From IMG/VR virus record IMGVR_UViG_3300017696_000161, positions 1 through 5,692 of that record: DNA of 5,692 nt, one strand, 5' to 3'. The position numbers and the translations under genes are program-made. Position 1 is the first letter of the stretch. Every line of letters starts with the position of its first letter. The notes under the pieces are model-generated. The model did not search any database. It was given only the letters and a program-made list of their open reading frames with translations, and was not told the DNA's origin. This document shows positions 1-5,692 of the stretch, piece after piece.

Positions 1-99
1 GAAGAAATTGAAGATACTGGTGCAAATGGTGCAAATTCCTATATCTCTCCAAATAATTCCGTAGAAAATTTCTCAACTGAAGATGAAGAAATTGAAGAT
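1..99 (+). repeat. End of the tandem array / terminal overlap with 5602-5692
   Basis: 1-91 is identical to 5602-5692; 16-99 is a full 84-bp A unit. Confidence 0.93.
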
Positions 100-1857
100 G
101 AGGGTATTGAAATTAAAGACAATAAGATTATAATACAATCAAAAGATAAACACAAGTTTGAAATATCATACGGTATAGCCTGGTCAATTGAAGACACTAC
201 CAGAATAATTGACCTCAAAATACCACAGTTACCGCAATGGGTTTTTACAGCTAAGAAAAAAGATGAGGTCTTAAACATACCAGTTATAGTAGACTTTTAT
301 CAACTAGAGGGTAAAACGGTATACTATATCAGAAATAAAAAAGAGGTAGTAGAGAAGCTTTACAACTTCAGAGGTCAAAGAAATATCTCAAAGAAACTTA
401 TTAGTGAAGCTCTAGACATCTGGCTAGACCGTATTGACCCCTCAAAGTACATAAAATGGGTAGATGTAAGAGATGTTGTTAAGAAGTACAAGGAATGGGA
501 GGAGATAAACCAAGACCCCATTGGTTTCTTCCTTTCAAGAGCTAAAGAGGTAGTAGGGAATGAAAAGTTGAAAATTGCGGTATTACTAAGTATTGTATCT
601 TCTCAGCTGAAGAAACTATATGGAATATACAGAGTTCACCTTATCCTTACTGGGAGTTCTGGTGTAGGAAAGTCTTCAACAATTAAATCGATGTTGAAAC
701 TATTCTATGATAACACTGATGGGGTTGAAGACTTCATAGTGCTGAAACTCACAAGGATGACAAAGGAGGCACTAGGGCGTATAAATGTTGATAGCATGGA
801 CGGGAAGGTCTTACTTGTGGAGCAATTGGATAACATAGAGGGTGTTGACTACATCAGGGAAGCCATGAGTGAGGATAGAATAACAACACTTACCACGGTC
901 AAAGACTCTGAGGGTAACTTAGTTTCAAGGACGATCGTTATCCCTGGTCAGCCAGCATTTATAACAACCAATGTTACCGCCAATGTCGATCATCAAATCC
1001 TAAATAGGTCGATCCAGCTTTACCTTAGCCCGATAGAGGATGAAAGCATTAAGGAAAAAATCATAAGGTCAATTTTAATGAGGAAAAGTGTAGGTGAAGA
1101 CTCAAAATTAAAACTTGTTACTTACGTTTGGTTAAAAACAAGACCTAACGACCCAGAGTTTACAGAGGCTTTAGCGTCAAAAGTTACTGAACTCCTCAAG
1201 AAGTTTATCAACACTAAAAACATCTACCGTGCTACGGAGATAACAAGGAATTTAATAAGAGCCACGGCATCGCTTTTCGGTCATGAGGAAATAACAATGG
1301 AGGACGTAAACTTTGTCATGGATTATTTCAAAAAGGACATTATCCTTACTACACTTGAACTTTCAGAGAGGGACTTACAGATATTGAAGTGGTTAAGAGA
1401 CCATGGTTTTGTAACAGCTGAGAAAGAAGATGAAACCAGAGACGTTACAACTTCAGAGATCTCACAAGTTATTAAGATGAGCACACAGGAGACCAAGAAG
1501 GTGTTGGACTCATTATATGACAAGGGTTTACTATGGAAGGCATATGACGGTAAGCGTTTCAGCTGGGCTATTAACCGCTACGGGTTAAGGGTGTTAGAGG
1601 AGTTAGAGAAAGAAGTTGAGGAAGAACAACAAGGAGAGGAAGAAGGAAGTGAGGTCTTAATCGATGACCGATTACTTGCTTATATCTCCTCAAAATTACT
1701 GGGGAAGAACCAGGTTACGGATGAAGAATTAAGGGGAATACTAGAAAAAACCGCACAAGCTACAGACCCAGAAGCCCAAGACTTGTTTATCACGGTACTA
1801 GAGAAGAAGAGGTTAATAAAGAATAACGGTGACGGGACATGGAAGGTTTCTCCTTAA
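1..1857 (+). CDS. Replication protein, C-terminal part: MCM-like AAA+ ATPase/helicase plus two winged-helix-like domains (5'-partial in the window; continues from 4639-5601)
   Basis: Frame 1 is open from base 1 to TAA at 1855-1857, so the TTG at 568 is not the true start. MCM-like motifs: DPIGFFLSRAKEVVGNEKLKIAVLL, Walker A HLILTGSSGVGKS (GSSGVGKS at 652-675), Walker B DGKVLLVEQLD (VLLVEQLD at 808-831), IREAM, presensor-1 hairpin-like TTVKDSEGNLVSRTIV, arginine-finger-like ILNRS (R at 1006-1008), sensor-2-like YRATEITRNLIRA. wHTH-like segments at about 1360-1584 and 1660-1854. Confidence 0.85.
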   Translation, partial: EEIEDTGANGANSYISPNNSVENFSTEDEEIEDEGIEIKDNKIIIQSKDKHKFEISYGIAWSIEDTTRIIDLKIPQLPQWVFTAKKKDEVLNIPVIVDFYQLEGKTVYYIRNKKEVVEKLYNFRGQRNISKKLISEALDIWLDRIDPSKYIKWVDVRDVVKKYKEWEEINQDPIGFFLSRAKEVVGNEKLKIAVLLSIVSSQLKKLYGIYRVHLILTGSSGVGKSSTIKSMLKLFYDNTDGVEDFIVLKLTRMTKEALGRINVDSMDGKVLLVEQLDNIEGVDYIREAMSEDRITTLTTVKDSEGNLVSRTIVIPGQPAFITTNVTANVDHQILNRSIQLYLSPIEDESIKEKIIRSILMRKSVGEDSKLKLVTYVWLKTRPNDPEFTEALASKVTELLKKFINTKNIYRATEITRNLIRATASLFGHEEITMEDVNFVMDYFKKDIILTTLELSERDLQILKWLRDHGFVTAEKEDETRDVTTSEISQVIKMSTQETKKVLDSLYDKGLLWKAYDGKRFSWAINRYGLRVLEELEKEVEEEQQGEEEGSEVLIDDRLLAYISSKLLGKNQVTDEELRGILEKTAQATDPEAQDLFITVLEKKRLIKNNGDGTWKVSP

Positions 1858-1889
1858 GCCGTGCTTTTGAATTTTCTGACTACAGCACT

Positions 1890-1911
1890 ATTAACCGAAT
1901 TCAGTTTTTTT
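1890..1911 (+). terminator. Putative oligo-T terminator downstream of rep
   Basis: T7 run at 1905-1911, about 50 bp after the rep stop, preceded by the near-palindrome AACCGAATTCAGTT. Confidence 0.45.
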
Positions 1912-1928
1912 ACAAAAGTGAGGAATTT

Positions 1929-1996
1929 TTATCACCTTCTTTCAATTTAACGGGTGATAAGATAATTATCATCCTTTTTAAATGCTTACGTGATAA
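1929..1996. promoter_or_regulatory. Putative int promoter/operator region
   Basis: IR TTATCACC (1929-1936) / GGTGATAA (1953-1960), perfect palindrome GATAATTATC (1961-1970), TATA-like TTTTTAAA (1975-1982), further GTGATAA (1990-1996). Confidence 0.45.
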
Positions 1997-2015
1997 ATAT
2001 AAACGGGCTGACGGA

Positions 2016-3044
<1,029 letters not shown>

Positions 3045-3100
3045 CTCATGAAGACGTCTAATAGCCGTTTTCTCCTTCACTCACTTCCCGCCTCATGACT

Positions 3101-3196
3101 GCTTGGATCACTTTCTATTTCTTTTCACCGTTCAGAGGTTGGATAGATGTAGTGAAGATGGATAGAGCTTGGGTCACTTTCTATTTTCTTTTCACC
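3101..3196. repeat. 29/30-bp direct repeat separated by a 37-bp unique segment, followed by a C11 run
   Basis: GCTTGGATCACTTTCTATTT-CTTTTCACC (3101-3129) and GCTTGGGTCACTTTCTATTTTCTTTTCACC (3167-3196); C run at 3195-3205. Confidence 0.85.
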
Positions 3197-4152
3197 CCCC
3201 CCCCCGATTCGGAATTCGAGTTCGGAGTTCGGTAAGGAAGGTGTGAAAGGTGGAAAAGGGTTAGCCTGGTTTGGGAAGTGATAGCTTGGGAAGGGAAAAA
3301 GCCTAGAAAGCTAAACCTGGCTCTAAGAAGGAGAGAAGGAAAGAAAGGGTTAGTCATAGGAAGGAAAGCTAGGCTAGGAAAGGTGTGTAAGGTGAAGAAG
3401 GAGAGAAAGCGAAGGAGAGAAAGCCTTAGCTTGGAAAATCGGGTAAACGGGAAAAGCTTGGAAAGGTGAAAGGGAGAAAGCCTTAGCCTAGAAAGACTGG
3501 AAAGCCTGGAAAGGTGTGAGAGGTGAGAAACACATAAACTAGACATAGACACATGCACAAAAGACCTGGGAAGAGGTGATGTCGGGCTGGGTTAGAGGTG
3601 TAAGGAGGGTAAGCAAAGCCAGGTTAGAGGTGTAAGGAGGGTAAGGTAAAACTAGTTGGATAAACTAGAAACGGGGTTAAGGGGCGATAGCCCCTTATAG
3701 ATTTTAGAAAGTGAAACTCTAGTGTAAACTCTAATGTAAAATGTTTAGAGAGGGAGTTAGGGAGGTAAGGAAACTAAACACACGCATAAAAAACTCGGGA
3801 AGAGATGATGCCAGGCTAGGTTTGGTATGGTGAGAAAGGTAAGCCAGCTAGAGAGGTAGAGGAGGTGAGAAAGGTGAAAAAGGTAGAGAAGGTGAAGAAG
3901 GAAGGTGGTAAGGTGAAGAAGGAGAGAAGGTAAGGAAGGTTTGAAAGTGAAAAAGCCTAAAGGAAGATGTTAGGAAGAAGTATGGAAGGTTAGGAAGAAG
4001 AGGAAGGAGTTAGGAAGCTGTTTGGAAGGTATGGAAGGAAGAAGGTTTGAAAGTGAAAAAGCCTAAAGGTAAAAGGTTAGCCAGGTAAGGGATAAAGTGT
4101 GTATAATACTAATTTTTAATAAATTAAACCCGAATTCGAACGGGCGGGCGGG
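3195..4152. other. Purine-rich, internally repetitive, apparently non-coding module bracketed by imperfect inverted repeats
   Basis: Purine counts: 51/60 in 3841-3900 and 49/60 in 3901-3960. Direct repeats: 29 bp (3935-3963 = 4041-4069), 24 bp (3590-3613 = 3622-3645), 21 bp (3387-3407 = 3908-3928), 45 bp imperfect (3549-3593 vs 3778-3822). Boundary IRs at 3195-3222 and 4127-4152. Confidence 0.75.
3678..3697. other. Perfect 8-bp GC-rich hairpin near the centre of the purine-rich module
   Basis: TAAGGGGC-GATA-GCCCCTTA. Confidence 0.8.
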
Positions 4153-4161
4153 CTTTTTTTT
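4129..4161 (+). terminator. Putative terminator: short GC stem plus T8
   Basis: CCCG-AATTCGAA-CGGG, then CGGGCGGGC and TTTTTTTT (4154-4161). Confidence 0.45.
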
Positions 4162-4189
4162 AGATAGTTGAAAATCCTATCATTCTTCA

Positions 4190-4286
4190 CTCTTTATTAC
4201 GCTCTTTCTACTCTTATACTACTCTTACACTATGTTTACATTTCTCTTATCATATGCTTATACTTCACTCTTACCGCATTCACTTA
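4190..4286 (+). repeat. Pyrimidine-rich tract with CTCTT(A)-like motif at roughly 11-bp spacing
   Basis: CTCTT at 4190, 4202, 4211, 4222, 4244, 4268; variants TGTTT 4233, TGCTT 4255, CACTT 4281. Confidence 0.6.
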
Positions 4287-4381
4287 TCGGTCGACCGTGA
4301 TAGATCTAGAATTAGTTTACAATAAAACATTAGGAGAAATTACCTTTTTTTTTCCTAGTTTTTAGGGAGAAAACTTCAGAA

Positions 4382-4416: not shown

Positions 4417-4590
4417 ATGGGTGAAAACATGTCCCCAAAAAGATCCGCACTACTACTACGATTAAGAGAAGAAGATAGAGAAATGATAAGACGGTTAGCA
4501 AAGTATTATGACATCGCTGAAGCGGATGTAATAAAGATCCTAATCAGAGAATACATGAAAAACCATAATATCGAGGTGGGCTCTTCATAG
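4417..4590 (+). CDS. copG: Ribbon-helix-helix (CopG-like) DNA-binding regulator, 57 aa (53 aa if started at ATG 4429)
   Basis: MGENMSPKRSALLLRLREEDREMIRRLAKYYDIAEADVIKILIREYMKNHNIEVGSS*: beta-strand (SALLLRL), helix A (EEDREMIRRLAK), turn, helix B (EADVIKILIREYM). Lies directly upstream of rep. GGTGA at 4420-4424 precedes the alternative ATG 4429. Confidence 0.85.
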   Translation: MGENMSPKRSALLLRLREEDREMIRRLAKYYDIAEADVIKILIREYMKNHNIEVGSS

Positions 4591-4638: not shown

Positions 4639-5692
4639 ATGGTCTTATCAAACTCTAAGTCAAATATGGTTAATAAACATAACGGTAGTCCAAGTAAGGG
4701 AGAAATGGACAGAGAGACACTCACGAAGGCGGTTGCTGAAAAAGTGAAAAAGTACAAAGAGGAGAAAAGCAAGACAGATGAAAAAATTAGAAAATATCTG
4801 GAGGAGAAATCTAAGTTAGAACGGGCGAATGCCAGTAATAATTCAGTGAGACAAGAAAATTCAAAAGTGACACAGAAAAAAGACAAAGACTCTAATAATA
4901 ATTCAGTGGCACAGCAAAATTCAACACTGGTGCATCGTAATACCGAGACAAATTCAAAAAATGTTGCACCAGTGGTAAAAAATTCTACGGAAGTAAACAG
5001 AGAGCATACTAAAAATGCACCAAATGCACCAGTATCGAATTTATCTTATGCACCAGTGCAAAAATCCAAAACTGGTGCAAATGGTGCAAATTCCTATATC
5101 TCTCCAAATAATTCCGTAGAAAATTTCTCAACTGAAGATGAAGAAATTGAAGATACTGGTGCAAATGGTGCAAATTCCTATATCTCTCCAAATAATTCCG
5201 TAGAAAATTTCTCAACTGAAGATGAAGAAATTGAAGATACTGGTGCAAATGGTGCAAATTCCTATATCTCTCCAAATAATTCCGTAGAAATAAACTCTGA
5301 TTGGGAAGAAAAATCCAATACTGATATAGGATTTAGTTCATCTGAAGATGAAGAAATTGAAGATACTGGTGCAAATGGTGCAAATTCCTATATCTCTCCA
5401 AATAATTCCGTAGAAATAAACTCTGATTGGGAAGAAAAATCCAATACTGATATAGGATTTAGTTCATCTGAAGATGAAGAAATTGAAGATACTGGTGCAA
5501 ATGGTGCAAATTCCTATATCTCTCCAAATAATTCCGTAGAAATAAACTCTGATTGGGAAGAAAAATCCAATACTGATATAGGATTTAGTTCATCTGAAGA
5601 TGAAGAAATTGAAGATACTGGTGCAAATGGTGCAAATTCCTATATCTCTCCAAATAATTCCGTAGAAAATTTCTCAACTGAAGATGAAGAAA
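4639..5692 (+). CDS. Replication protein, N-terminal part: basic/low-complexity region plus acidic tandem peptide repeats (runs off the window end; joins 1-1857 in frame, about 939 aa in total)
   Basis: ATG at 4639 preceded by GGTGA (4629-4633). Frame 1 has no stop to the window end (MVLSNSKSNMVNKHNGSPSKGEMDRETLTKAVAEKVKKYKEEKSK...TGANGANSYISPNNSVENFSTEDEE). The codon at 5602 corresponds to codon 1 of the window start. Confidence 0.82.
   Translation, partial: MVLSNSKSNMVNKHNGSPSKGEMDRETLTKAVAEKVKKYKEEKSKTDEKIRKYLEEKSKLERANASNNSVRQENSKVTQKKDKDSNNNSVAQQNSTLVHRNTETNSKNVAPVVKNSTEVNREHTKNAPNAPVSNLSYAPVQKSKTGANGANSYISPNNSVENFSTEDEEIEDTGANGANSYISPNNSVENFSTEDEEIEDTGANGANSYISPNNSVEINSDWEEKSNTDIGFSSSEDEEIEDTGANGANSYISPNNSVEINSDWEEKSNTDIGFSSSEDEEIEDTGANGANSYISPNNSVEINSDWEEKSNTDIGFSSSEDEEIEDTGANGANSYISPNNSVENFSTEDEE
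4836..4924 (+). repeat. Imperfect 29-bp direct repeat (period 60) in the rep N-terminus
   Basis: TAATAATTCAGTGAGACAAGAAAATTCAA (4836-4864) versus TAATAATTCAGTGGCACAGCAAAATTCAA (4896-4924); encodes NNSVxQxNS, related to NNSVEN of the array. Confidence 0.7.
4925..5079. repeat. Cluster of TGGTGCA/TGCACCA motifs in both orientations (iteron-like) inside rep
   Basis: CACTGGTGCA (4925-4934) / TGCACCAGTG (4965-4974) is a perfect 10-bp IR. TGCACCAAATGCACCAGTATC (5016-5036) is a 19/21 reverse complement of the array core GATACTGGTGCAAATGGTGCA. TGCACCAGT (5049-5057) / ACTGGTGCA (5071-5079) is another IR. Confidence 0.8.
5071..5692 (+). repeat. Perfect in-frame coding tandem array A-A-B-B-B-A (A = 84 bp/28 aa, B = 126 bp/42 aa)
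   Basis: Units start with ACTGGTGCAAAT at 5071, 5155, 5239, 5365, 5491 and 5617. A = TGANGANSYISPNNSVENFSTEDEEIED; B = TGANGANSYISPNNSVEINSDWEEKSNTDIGFSSSEDEEIED. The last A unit is completed at window bases 16-99. Confidence 0.95.

What the first reader, a model, noticed from the sequence alone, without database searches (positions are those of the whole stretch)
3195..4152. ~960-bp strand-asymmetric purine module delimited by imperfect terminal inverted repeats
Seen: about 17% of this compact genome is an A/G-rich tract (82-85% purine in the two 60-bp lines counted) with no credible gene. The reverse complement of the left end (3195-3222), AACTCGAATTCCGAATCGGGGGGGGGGG, aligns to the right end (4127-4152), AACCCGAATTC-GAA-CGGGCGGGCGGG, at 23/28. 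A perfect hairpin (3678-3697) sits almost at the midpoint, many of the cytosines fall in recurring AGCCT/AGCT/CCTGG/CCAGG words, an AT-rich patch (4101-4127) lies just inside the right IR, and a T8 run lies just outside. Inference: a discrete cis-acting unit, such as a single-strand/lagging-strand priming region for a primase-less replicon, an invertible or MITE-like segment, a packaging signal, or a long non-coding RNA whose ends pair. I know of no described element with this layout.
Basis: partly seen in the sequence, partly recalled or inferred. Interest (0 to 1): 0.72.

Follow-up and report, generated by a model that had tools for sequence, protein, structure and literature searches.

The report
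Shared non-coding purine module of Sulfolobales plasmids
The purine-rich kilobase is real and non-coding, but it is this small archaeal plasmid's copy of a module found in Sulfolobales conjugative and cryptic plasmids, long guessed to be a replication origin and never shown to be one.

Summary
Window 3195-4152 is 71.7% purine against 56.4% elsewhere (core 3231-4097: 74.2%). It has no credible gene. The 23/28 end inverted repeat, perfect hairpin, AT patch, T8 run and non-random cytosine words are all there.

The layout is not undescribed. The window is a circular pSSVi-like integrative plasmid carrying CopG, a pSSVi-type Rep and an SSV-type integrase. Its module shares order, orientation and boundary motifs with "section B", the putative origin of Sulfolobales conjugative plasmids. 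The shared parts are a G/C homopolymer boundary with TTCGAR repeats, hairpin(s) between two purine tracts, and a GC clamp followed by a box and phased iterons. Related tracts occur in pIT3, pXZ1, pRN1 and pRN2.

Across these plasmids only composition, hairpin and boundaries are conserved. The end inverted repeat is not. Hairpin variants (G·T wobbles, compensatory changes, G..A loops of 3-4 nt) point to a structure on the single purine strand.

Published pRN1 work shows the matching region is dispensable for replication. The closest Rep relatives lack the module.

Best reading (about 0.45): an accessory, helper- or host-dependent origin-like site, possibly used for hitch-hiking with conjugative plasmids. 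MITE, invertible-segment and packaging readings are not supported. It is a new member of a known, functionally unproven kind.

The parts
3046..3194 (+). Pyrimidine-rich left flank (27-53% purine in 60-nt bins) with two 30-nt direct repeats (3101-3129 and 3167-3196, 66 nt apart), each ending in CTTTTCACC. It probably also terminates integrase transcripts.
   Evidence: (family D12). Pyrimidine tracts ending in TTTCAC/CTTCACC precede the module in pTC, pIT3 and both Stygiolobus loci.
3195..3205 (+). C11 homopolymer at the left boundary. It is C10 in a second contig of the same sample.
   Evidence: pTC has the identical TTTCAC-C11. pIT3 has G15/G9/G11, pRN1 G17 and pXZ1 G9 on the purine strand.
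3206..3232 (+). TTCGRA/TTCGAG heptad repeats.
   Evidence: TRF reports period 7 over 3207-3232. The same repeats sit at the left boundary of pTC and both Stygiolobus modules.
3231..3672 (+). Purine tract I. It holds more cytosine, mostly in CCWGG and AGC words, and degenerate direct repeats.
3673..3699 (+). Conserved hairpin motif GGGGTTAAGGGGC-GATA-GCCCCTTATA, with the stem at 3678-3697.
   Evidence: Invariant core in pARN4, pING1, pIT3, pTC and others: 27 copies in 12 replicons, always on the purine strand. Window 3652-3707 is 93% identical to Stygiolobus L012 7005-7058.
3700..4097 (+). Purine tract II, nearly free of cytosine (GC skew up to +0.83). It contains a 12-nt tandem repeat at 3710-3740 and direct repeats at 3546-3651/3775-3879 and 3935-3973/4041-4080.
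4101..4127 (.). AT-rich patch (7% GC), a candidate unwinding element.
   Evidence: Conjugative plasmids have an AT-rich stretch between their two right-boundary boxes.
4127..4153 (+). Right boundary GC clamp with a small hairpin (CCCGAATTCGAACGGG, then GCGGGCGGGC).
   Evidence: It resembles GCCCGAAAT(T)GGGGG of pAH1, pNOB8, pARN4 and Stygiolobus, and the G6/G7 clamp of pTC.
4154..4175 (+). T8 run followed by the box AGATAGTTGAAAAT.
   Evidence: pTC has T6 followed by GAGATAGATGAAAT. Other conjugative plasmids have GGGGGTATAGAGATGAAA, which is the TCTATACCCCC motif of the literature (PMC4390865).
4176..4330 (+). Pyrimidine-rich stretch with phased short iterons: TACTCTTAT-like at 4209, 4220 and 4242 (spacing 11 and 22 nt), and CACTCTTA at about 4187 and 4266.
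   Evidence: Each homologue has its own phased iterons at this position: pAH1 has 5 at 11/22 nt, pIT3 has 4 at 21 nt, and pRN1 has GTAAGATGTC four times. Window 4244-4264 matches pRN1 885-865 at 20/21.
1839..3044 (+). Context: SSV-type integrase with an attP tRNA fragment (about 2194-2240) inside the gene.
   Evidence: Pfam PF16795 at 2.6e-53 and PF07935.
4417..4590 (+). Context: CopG/ORF56-like ribbon-helix-helix protein at the start of the rep operon.
   Evidence: pSSVi's counterpart is annotated as an ORF56-family copy control protein.
4639..5692 (+). Context: 5' part of the large rep gene. It continues across the circular junction into 1-1857 (Walker A motif GSSGVGKSS). It contains 84/126-nt tandem repeats.
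   Evidence: It is 37% identical over 379 aa to the pSSVi replication protein.

Best explanation
The tract is this plasmid's copy of a non-coding, strand-asymmetric cis module that Sulfolobales plasmids share. The same module is 'section B', the putative origin, of conjugative plasmids. It most resembles the pTC and Stygiolobus versions and was probably acquired by recombination.

I think it works as an origin-like DNA-processing site that depends on host or helper-plasmid factors, not on the plasmid's own Rep. The proposed steps are:
1. Proteins bind the box and the phased iterons at the right end.
2. The adjacent AT patch melts, while the GC clamp and the G/C homopolymer confine the bubble.
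3. The purine-rich strand, which can hardly pair with itself, is exposed as a single strand.
4. Its one strong hairpin, with a G..A loop, serves as the recognition or priming signal for complementary-strand synthesis.

In a small plasmid with its own Rep this would be an accessory. It would let the plasmid be co-replicated or mobilised when a conjugative plasmid is present, and would not be its vegetative origin.

What is shown: the homology of layout and motifs, the non-coding status, conservation of composition only, and strand-specific maintenance of the hairpin. What comes from the literature: dispensability of the related pRN1 region. What is inferred: protein binding, melting, priming and mobilisation.

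My sub-probabilities: same kind of module as section B, about 0.9. Origin-like site acting through the single purine strand, about 0.45. Specifically a mobilisation site, about 0.2.
For: 1. Same order and orientation of parts in 11 other elements: a pyrimidine tract, a G/C homopolymer and/or TTCGAR repeats, purine tract I, 1-4 hairpin motifs, purine tract II (65-74% purine over 570-1450 nt), a GC clamp, a box, and phased iterons.
2. The left boundary is 16/16 identical to pTC (TTTCAC-C11) and 89% identical over 35 nt. The right boundary, T run plus AGATAGnTGAAA, is shared with pTC.
3. The literature calls this region of conjugative plasmids an ORF-free putative origin with repeats. The repeats named for pTC1 lie inside the module I delimit (PMC4390865, PMC4872121).
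4. The hairpin occurs 27 times, always on the purine strand. Its loops are 3 or 4 nt and almost always G..A. The stem is kept through G·T wobble in 7 copies, which in 6 of them would be an A·C mismatch cutting the stem on the other strand, through one C-G to T-A double change, and through loss of a G-C pair in 3 copies. A variable spacer argues against a dimeric duplex-binding site.
5. The purine tracts do not align between elements, so composition rather than sequence is what is kept.
6. pSSVi and the three closest Rep relatives lack the module. The Rep family therefore works without it.
7. pRN1 has a related tract that shares the right-boundary boxes and a G17 boundary. That region tolerates insertions and complete deletion without loss of replication. 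Interrupting the rep operon abolishes replication even though the tract is intact (PMC1919505, PMC4234260).
8. Precedent from my own knowledge of Stedman et al. 2000, not read here: defective pING2 and pING3 spread only with help from an active conjugative variant.
Against: 1. No experiment has ever shown origin or transfer function for section B. The published assignment rests on repeats and on skew, and the skew is the purine bias itself.
2. No relaxase or nick site is known for Sulfolobus conjugation. Whether single-stranded DNA is transferred at all is unknown.
3. The window lacks the ~150-aa winged-helix gene and the TraG-like gene that flank the module in conjugative plasmids, and nothing shows that a conjugative plasmid co-occurs in this sample.
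4. The exact GGGGGTATAGA box is absent from the window, as it is from pTC.
5. Predicted single-strand folding of the tract does not differ clearly from the rest of the plasmid.
6. The pRN1 tract lacks the conjugative-plasmid-type hairpin and has ATCAC...GTGAT hairpins instead. Its dispensability may therefore not carry over.
Confidence: 0.45

Rival explanations
1. It is the plasmid's own vegetative origin. The pSSVi-type Rep, which has no primase domain, binds the iterons at 4190-4270, opens the AT patch, and host primase starts at the hairpin.
For: An AT patch, a GC clamp and phased element-specific iterons lie just upstream of the copG-rep operon. Conjugative-plasmid papers call the homologous region the origin (PMC4390865). 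Rep shows AAA+/MCM-like hits but no primase hit.
Against: pSSVi and the closest Rep relatives (L020, L021, L023) have no such tract. The related pRN1 region is dispensable, and the pRN1 origin is a stem-loop downstream of rep (PMC4234260). The rep gene itself holds a better Rep-specific candidate: TGGTGCAAA repeats with inverted copies at 4917-5692.
Confidence: 0.15
2. It is the template of a long purine-rich non-coding RNA or a primer RNA. Transcription in the + direction would give a G-rich transcript that forms a stable R-loop or acts in regulation. The hairpin would then be an RNA hairpin.
For: GC skew is +0.61, with 19 G3+ runs against 1 C3+ run. G·T (G·U) wobbles are tolerated only on the purine strand, and many loops are of GNRA type. 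All genes of the plasmid are on the same strand.
Against: There is no Rfam match and no conserved archaeal promoter at the left boundary. The left flank is full of T runs that should stop read-through. In pRN1 the ORFs lying in the related tract are reported to be expressed at very low levels (PMC1919505), although the strand measured is not stated there. The ends that could pair are not conserved.
Confidence: 0.12
3. It is an architectural element: a centromere-like array, a chromatin-binding platform, or an insulator. It would keep integrase read-through away from the copy-control operon.
For: The tract has many degenerate short repeats and enriched words: CCWGG at z = 4.6 and AGGTG 15 times against 3.6 expected. 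In the window, pIT3, pRN1 and pXZ1 it lies next to the copG-rep promoter, in either orientation.
Against: The window encodes no partition protein and no PlrA. Words differ between elements. Insertions into the pRN1 tract gave shuttle vectors that were maintained for about 200 generations under selection (PMC1919505). A kilobase is far more than a terminator needs.
Confidence: 0.1
4. It is a functionless remnant of recombination with a conjugative plasmid, carried along passively.
For: It is dispensable in pRN1 (PMC4234260). Its distribution among small plasmids is patchy: present in pIT3, pXZ1, pRN1, pRN2 and the window, absent in pHEN7 and pSSVi. pIT3 keeps a truncated piece of the neighbouring conjugative-plasmid gene.
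Against: It makes up 17% of a 5.6-kb plasmid. The purine bias, both boundaries and a perfect hairpin are kept while the tract sequence has diverged beyond alignment. That pattern indicates selection.
Confidence: 0.1
5. It is a MITE-like or invertible segment defined by its terminal inverted repeats, or an SSV packaging signal.
For: The 23/28 inverted repeat sits exactly at the composition boundaries. The plasmid carries a recombinase and belongs to the family of an SSV satellite.
Against: There is no target-site duplication. The inverted repeat is absent or different in homologues. Each arm is separately homologous to a one-sided boundary motif. The hairpin-motif scan found no multi-copy family in genomes. 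The second contig of the sample has the same orientation. The integrase acts at an att site inside its own gene. pSSVi lacks the tract.
Confidence: 0.04

Closest known systems
Section B (putative replication origin) of Sulfolobales conjugative plasmids: pTC1, pARN3/4, pING1, pKEF9, pAH1, pMGB1, pYN01, pNOB8, plus integrated copies in Stygiolobus sp. CP850M and Sulfolobales archaeon HS-7
   Same: It is an ORF-free tract of 0.6-1.4 kb at 65-74% purine. It carries the same hairpin motif on the purine strand, and CCWGG is enriched. The left boundary of pTC is the same (TTTCAC-C11 followed by TTCGAR repeats), and so is its right boundary (G/C clamp, T run, AGATAGnTGAAA). Phased iterons follow the right end.
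   Different: The window has no neighbouring ~150-aa winged-helix gene and no TraG-like or other transfer genes. It has only one hairpin copy, lacks the exact GGGGGTATAGA boxes, uses different words in the tracts (AAGGTG, GGAAGG), and has a terminal inverted repeat that the others lack. It sits on a 5.6-kb integrative plasmid with an unrelated Rep.
pIT3 (Saccharolobus solfataricus, 4967 bp), positions about 539-1445
   Same: pIT3 is a small non-conjugative plasmid carrying the same module upstream of and co-oriented with copG-rep. The module is bounded by G/C homopolymers, carries three hairpin motifs, and is followed by four iterons at 21-nt spacing. It also has a short boundary inverted repeat, though of a different sequence.
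   Different: Its Rep is a primase-polymerase of the pRN type. The homopolymers are G on the purine strand. It has a (GGGGCTAGGGCTA)n array and a remnant of the conjugative-plasmid neighbour gene.
pRN1 region about 1017-2056 (orf90a/orf72/orf90b plus the C17 stretch), with the similar tracts of pXZ1 and pRN2
   Same: A tract of about 1 kb at 72% purine, bounded by a long G/C homopolymer next to the copG promoter. It has three copies of the conjugative-plasmid right-boundary box, each followed by phased iterons. pRN1 970-811 matches pAH1 at E = 1e-13, and window 4244-4264 matches pRN1 885-865 at 20/21.
   Different: Its orientation is opposite to the rep operon. Its hairpins are ATCAC...GTGAT rather than the conjugative-plasmid type, and the enriched word is GCTG[CT]AG rather than CCWGG. 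It has been shown experimentally to be dispensable for replication (PMC4234260, PMC1919505).
Single-strand initiation or origin signals of bacterial replicons: RSF1010 ssiA/ssiB, sso of rolling-circle plasmids, phage G4 complementary-strand origin, F-plasmid Frpo (from established knowledge; RSF1010 is summarised in PMC4234260)
   Same: These are strand-specific hairpins read on exposed single-stranded DNA. They are dispensable for initiation as such and are often shared between unrelated replicons. The GCGAAGC-type G..A-loop mini-hairpins known to be unusually stable in DNA occur in six of the 27 copies.
   Different: Those signals are 50-300 nt long without a kilobase of purine bias. Their primases or polymerases are known. 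No HUH Rep or relaxase is present here. The resemblance is in how it may work, not in membership.

Membership tests
Section-B-type module of Sulfolobales conjugative plasmids | Large ORF-free region with direct and inverted repeats | tested here: met
   Each + frame carries 21-30 stops. The minus-strand ORF is within chance. Internal direct repeats are present. PMC4390865 describes section B as having repeats and no ORFs.
Section-B-type module of Sulfolobales conjugative plasmids | Conserved hairpin motif GGGGTTAAGGGGC-N2-4-GCCCCTTATA on the purine-rich strand | tested here: met
   Present at window 3673-3699, with the core invariant across 27 copies in 12 replicons.
Section-B-type module of Sulfolobales conjugative plasmids | Purine bias of 65-74% over 0.5-1.4 kb, strongest between the hairpins and the right boundary (a feature I derived here) | tested here: met
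   Window 3231-4097 is 74.2% purine. All 11 comparison modules fall between 65% and 74%.
Section-B-type module of Sulfolobales conjugative plasmids | Left boundary: pyrimidine tract, then a G/C homopolymer and/or TTCGAR repeats | tested here: met
   TTTCAC-C11 is identical to pTC. TTCGAR repeats are shared with pTC and both Stygiolobus loci. The left ends of several other conjugative plasmids were not resolved; pARN4's is interrupted by an IS.
Section-B-type module of Sulfolobales conjugative plasmids | Conserved box TCTATACCCCC (GGGGGTATAGA on the purine strand) at the right end | tested here: inconclusive
   The exact box is absent from the window. The window has the pTC-like variant, a T run followed by AGATAGTTGAAAAT. 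PMC4390865 states that pTC1, an accepted conjugative plasmid, also lacks the box.
Section-B-type module of Sulfolobales conjugative plasmids | Position between the ~150-aa ORF/TraG-like gene and the replication-gene section of a conjugative plasmid | tested here: not met
   The window encodes only Rep, integrase and CopG. The module is therefore of this type but sits outside a conjugative plasmid, as in pIT3.
Section-B-type module of Sulfolobales conjugative plasmids | Function as a replication origin | not testable with these tools
   It is called 'putative' in PMC4390865 and PMC4872121. The related pRN1 region is dispensable (PMC4234260).
MITE / non-autonomous transposon | Terminal inverted repeats, a target-site duplication, and many copies | tested here: not met
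   The inverted repeat is 23/28 with gaps. The flanks TTTTCA|C11 and GGGC|T8 share no duplication. A hairpin-motif scan of 185,579 genomes found only conjugative-plasmid-type loci in Sulfolobales. A direct genome scan with the inverted-repeat arms was not run.
Invertible DNA segment | Both orientations present in a population, with a recombinase acting at the inverted repeats | tested here: inconclusive
   The only other contig (L029, same sample) has the same orientation. The sole recombinase is an SSV-type integrase whose att site lies inside its own gene. Raw reads were not available.
Known RNA families (Rfam 15) | A covariance-model match | tested here: not met
   No hit in 3046-4330 even at E <= 1.
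Single-strand origin / ssi signals | A hairpin maintained on one strand only | tested here: met
   Wobble pairs are tolerated on the purine strand, with A·C mismatches on the other strand in 6 of the 7 wobble-bearing copies. There is one compensatory double change, 3 copies have lost a G-C pair, and loops are G..A.
Single-strand origin / ssi signals | Orientation-dependent priming of complementary-strand synthesis by a defined primase or RNA polymerase | not testable with these tools
   This needs in vitro priming assays or single-stranded DNA accumulation assays.

The most novel reading that the evidence does not exclude
The purine module is the cis-acting site of archaeal plasmid conjugation, an archaeal counterpart of oriT plus leading region. 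Small plasmids such as this one, pIT3, pXZ1 and pRN1 would carry copies in order to be mobilised by conjugative plasmids. The purine-only strand would be the one handed over or exposed, and the G..A-loop hairpins would be its priming signals.
Probability: 0.17. Interest if true: 0.75.

Novelty: new member of a known kind. Interest (0 to 1): 0.4.

Why it matters
The mechanisms of replication and transfer of crenarchaeal conjugative plasmids are still unknown. Their "origin" has been only a guess for more than twenty years.

This analysis shows the same module, with sharp boundaries and a hairpin maintained on one strand, on at least three unrelated small replicons: pSSVi-type, pRN-type and pIT3. 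In pRN1 the related region is dispensable. That changes the question from "the origin of conjugative plasmids" to "a portable accessory site".

It also gives a compact 5.6-kb test object. Deletion, inversion and hairpin mutants could be scored for mobilisation, copy number and single-stranded DNA in existing Sulfolobus genetic systems.

The value is moderate. The sequence class was already present in well-known plasmids, and nothing here proves a function.

Tried and rejected
1. Rfam at a permissive threshold and a tRNA scan found nothing in the tract.
2. The sigma-70/terminator scan only re-found the hairpin and the GC clamp. It does not cover archaeal promoters.
3. BLAST of the tract against plasmids and phages aligned only the hairpin and the left boundary. 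The purine tracts themselves do not align with any homologue.
4. I looked for the module in the closest Rep relatives from IMG/VR and metagenomes. It is absent, so there is no near relative on which to test covariation of the inverted repeat.
5. Conservation of the terminal inverted repeat was negative in pTC and Stygiolobus.
6. The idea that the purine strand is unusually structure-free was inconclusive. Sliding-window folding energies differ little from the rest of the plasmid, although tract II has zero predicted structure at 75 C and the hairpin is the strongest local structure.
7. A coding reading was rejected: stops are dense on the + strand and the minus ORF is chance.
8. The recombination motif TAAACTGGGGAGTTTA of conjugative plasmids was not found in the window.
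9. Eight bacterial MAG hits to the hairpin pattern lie in clusters of unrelated GC hairpins, with no Rfam family there. I treated them as look-alikes.
10. Greve 2004, Stedman 2000 and Berkner & Lipps 2007 (J Bacteriol) are not held. Searches for the motif string and for 'pXZ1' gave nothing useful. No open paper mentions the purine bias.
11. MAFFT misaligned the short hairpin variants, so I counted pairs with a script instead of the count of structure pairs.
Full report
WHAT THE WINDOW IS

The 5692-base window is IMG/VR contig UViG_3300017696_000161. Its ends overlap by 91 nt, so it is a circle of about 5601 bp. All credible genes are on the + strand.
- A ribbon-helix-helix CopG/ORF56-like gene lies at 4417-4590.
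- A large rep gene runs from 4639 across the junction to 1857. It has a Walker A motif and weak MCM/AAA+ hits, and is 37% identical over 379 aa to the replication protein of pSSVi.
- An SSV-type integrase lies at 1839-3044 with a tRNA-derived att fragment inside the gene.

It is therefore a pSSVi-like integrative plasmid of Sulfolobales. The finding concerns the gap between the integrase and copG.

CHECK OF THE OBSERVATION

- Positions 3195-4152 are 71.7% purine against 56.4% in the rest of the window. Four 60-nt bins reach 82-85%.
- The maximal purine segment is 3231-4097 (74.2% purine, GC skew +0.61).
- The + frames carry 21-30 stops each. The 125-aa minus-strand ORF is what a pyrimidine-rich strand gives by chance: 31% of shuffles do as well.
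- The end arms align at 23/28. The score is 27 against 14.1 +/- 2.2 in shuffles, reached by 1 of 1000.
- The hairpin at 3678-3697 is perfect.
CCWGG occurs 7 times against 1.4 expected.
- The AT patch at 4101-4127 is 7% GC, and the T8 run is at 4154-4161.

WHAT IT IS

A BLAST of the region against plasmids aligned only about 40 nt around the hairpin. Those hits fell in unannotated DNA of the Sulfolobus conjugative plasmids pARN4, pKEF9, pING1, pTC and pYN01, and of the small plasmid pIT3. The motif GGGGTTAAGGGGC-N2-4-GCCCCTTATA is invariant in its core.

Reading those loci showed that the whole layout is shared. The parts follow in this order on the purine strand:
1. a pyrimidine tract ending in TTTCAC or CTTCACC;
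2. a G/C homopolymer and/or TTCGAR repeats;
3. a first purine tract with CCWGG/GGWCC words;
4. one to four hairpin motifs;
5. a second, almost cytosine-free purine tract;
6. a GC clamp;
7. a short box;
8. element-specific short iterons phased at 10-11 or 21-22 nt.

The window's left boundary (TTTCAC, C11, TTCGRA repeats) is nearly identical to that of pTC. Its right boundary (G/C clamp, T run, AGATAGTTGAAAAT) matches pTC's G6/G7, T6, GAGATAGATGAAAT. It is a variant of the GGGGGTATAGAGATGAAA box of the other conjugative plasmids.

This region is what the literature calls section B: ORF-free, repeat-rich and the "putative origin of replication". The repeats listed for pTC1 and the TCTATACCCCC motif lie inside the module as I delimit it (PMC4390865; PMC4872121). 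A pattern scan of one genome per species found the motif in Sulfolobales only in such contexts. These were a 22.8-kb Stygiolobus plasmid-like contig and integrated copies in Stygiolobus and Sulfolobales HS-7.

WIDER DISTRIBUTION

The same scoring found tracts of about 1 kb at 72% purine in pXZ1 and pRN1, and a 480-nt tract in pRN2. In these plasmids the purine strand is opposite to rep.

In pRN1 the tract starts at the known run of 17 C next to the orf56 promoter. It contains three copies of the conjugative-plasmid right-boundary box, each followed by phased iterons. pRN1 970-811 matches pAH1 2863-3033 at E = 1e-13. Window 4244-4264 matches pRN1 885-865 at 20 of 21 bases.

pHEN7, pSSVi and the three closest metagenomic relatives of the window's Rep have no such tract. 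The module therefore moves between backbones and is not tied to one replication protein.

WHAT IS AND IS NOT CONSERVED

The purine tracts do not align between elements. Only composition, the boundaries and the hairpin are kept.

The terminal inverted repeat is not a family feature. pTC and the Stygiolobus modules have none, and pIT3 has a different 13-nt one. Each arm of the window's repeat is separately homologous to a one-sided boundary motif. The homopolymer is C on the purine strand in the window and pTC, but G in pIT3, pRN1 and pXZ1. The shared feature is thus a G·C homopolymer boundary, not end pairing. A second contig from the same sample is identical to the window over the 4.66 kb they share apart from C10 instead of C11.

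THE HAIRPIN

I collected 27 copies from 12 replicons. All lie on the purine strand.
- Loops are 3 or 4 nt and almost always begin with G and end with A (GAA, GGA, GTGA, GATA, GGGA and others).
- Seven copies carry a G·T wobble. In six of them this would be an A·C mismatch cutting the stem on the other strand.
- One copy has a C-G to T-A double change.
- Three copies have lost one G-C pair from the stem.

A variable spacer is awkward for a dimeric protein on duplex DNA and harmless for a hairpin. This is modest but consistent evidence that the structure matters on the single purine strand, whether as DNA or RNA.

HOW IT MOST LIKELY WORKS

Two published results on pRN1 constrain the answer.
- Insertions at 1098, 1572, 1693, 1758 and 1778, and deletion of the whole region, leave replication intact (PMC1919505, PMC4234260).
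- Interrupting the rep operon abolishes replication although the tract is intact (PMC1919505).

So a related module is neither necessary nor sufficient for vegetative replication of a small plasmid in laboratory hosts. It is nevertheless present in every conjugative plasmid examined, and it keeps sharp boundaries and composition while its sequence drifts.

My best reading, at about 0.45, is an origin-like, strand-specific DNA-processing site served by host or conjugative-plasmid factors. Proteins would bind the box and iterons. The AT patch would open between GC clamps. The purine strand would be exposed, and its hairpin would act as a recognition or priming signal. In small plasmids this would be an accessory for co-replication or mobilisation with a conjugative plasmid. 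The steps after "hairpin kept on one strand" are inference.

Rivals:
- the plasmid's own vegetative origin (0.15);
- a purine-rich transcript or R-loop (0.12);
- an architectural, centromere or insulator role (0.10);
- a functionless remnant (0.10);
- a MITE, invertible segment or packaging signal (0.04).

COMPARISON WITH KNOWN SYSTEMS AND NOVELTY

The module belongs with section B of conjugative plasmids by hairpin, boundaries, composition and order of parts. It fails the criterion of sitting among conjugation genes, as does pIT3.

In how it may work it resembles single-strand initiation signals of bacterial replicons. It is not a member of those families.

It is a new member of a known but functionally unproven kind. 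The new points are three. The module occurs on a pSSVi-type integrative plasmid. Its boundaries are explicitly defined. There is evidence for a strand-specific hairpin. The link to the dispensable pRN1 region may or may not have been made in papers I could not read.

Interest: 0.4.

Noticed in passing
window 4917-5692 and 1-99: The 5' third of the rep gene holds 84- and 126-nt tandem repeats (99-100% identical), each with a doubled 9-mer TGGTGCAAA. Inverted copies (TGCACCA...) lie at 4917-4935, 4965-4979 and 5016-5042. They encode a repetitive N-terminal domain, but they also look like an iteron cluster and are a candidate Rep-specific origin. Repeat number may be collapsed or expanded by assembly.
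   Followed up: partly
window 3195-3205 vs L029 2652-2661: Two contigs of the same metagenome sample (3300017696) are identical over the 4.66 kb they share, apart from C11 versus C10 at the module's left boundary. This is either homopolymer slippage in the population or a sequencing or assembly error.
   Followed up: partly
window 2152-2280: The tRNA-derived att fragment inside the integrase gene (about 2194-2240) is flanked by a 33-nt inverted repeat that is 85% complementary and rich in G5/C6 runs. The 45-nt fragment is 93-96% identical to unannotated sites in many conjugative plasmids (pNOB8, pKEF9, pARN4 and others). Unrelated integrases may therefore use the same tRNA target.
   Followed up: no
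L030 (pRN1) 760-2060 and L002 (pXZ1) 1860-2830, minus strand: pRN1 and pXZ1 carry the purine module in inverted orientation relative to rep. Their hairpins are ATCAC...GTGAT instead of the conjugative-plasmid type. pRN1 has three boundary boxes, each followed by its own iteron set (for example GTAAGATGTC four times). The annotated pRN1 orf90a, orf72 and orf90b lie in this tract and may be artefacts of composition.
   Followed up: partly
L008-L011, L013-L015, L017 (bacterial MAG contigs): The 23-base hairpin pattern also matches eight bacterial metagenome-assembled genomes (Clostridia, Asaia, Anaerolineae, Armatimonadota, Spirochaetota and others). About 0.05 matches are expected for random sequence by my estimate. 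The matches lie within clusters of other GC-rich GNRA-loop hairpins, and no Rfam family was found there. They are probably unrelated repetitive palindromes, but I did not examine them further.
   Followed up: partly
window 1-1857 vs L019 (ASV1), SSV6/SSV7-like records: The Rep protein is 70% identical to an unannotated large ORF of Acidianus spindle-shaped virus 1. The rep gene also matches hypothetical-protein genes of several Sulfolobus spindle-shaped viruses at 68-72% nucleotide identity. This plasmid replication protein family is therefore shared with fuselloviruses.
   Followed up: no
L003 (pARN4) 695-1432: The left part of section B in pARN4 is interrupted by an insertion bounded by GTGTGTCCAACAAT inverted repeats, the IS6-type ends described for ISSte1. 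The module tolerates insertions in nature, as it does in pRN1 vectors.
   Followed up: no
window 3710-3740: Directly after the hairpin there is a 12-nt tandem repeat (AGTGTAAACTCT, 2.7 copies) in the least purine-rich part of the module. It may be another binding site. I did not compare it across elements.
   Followed up: no
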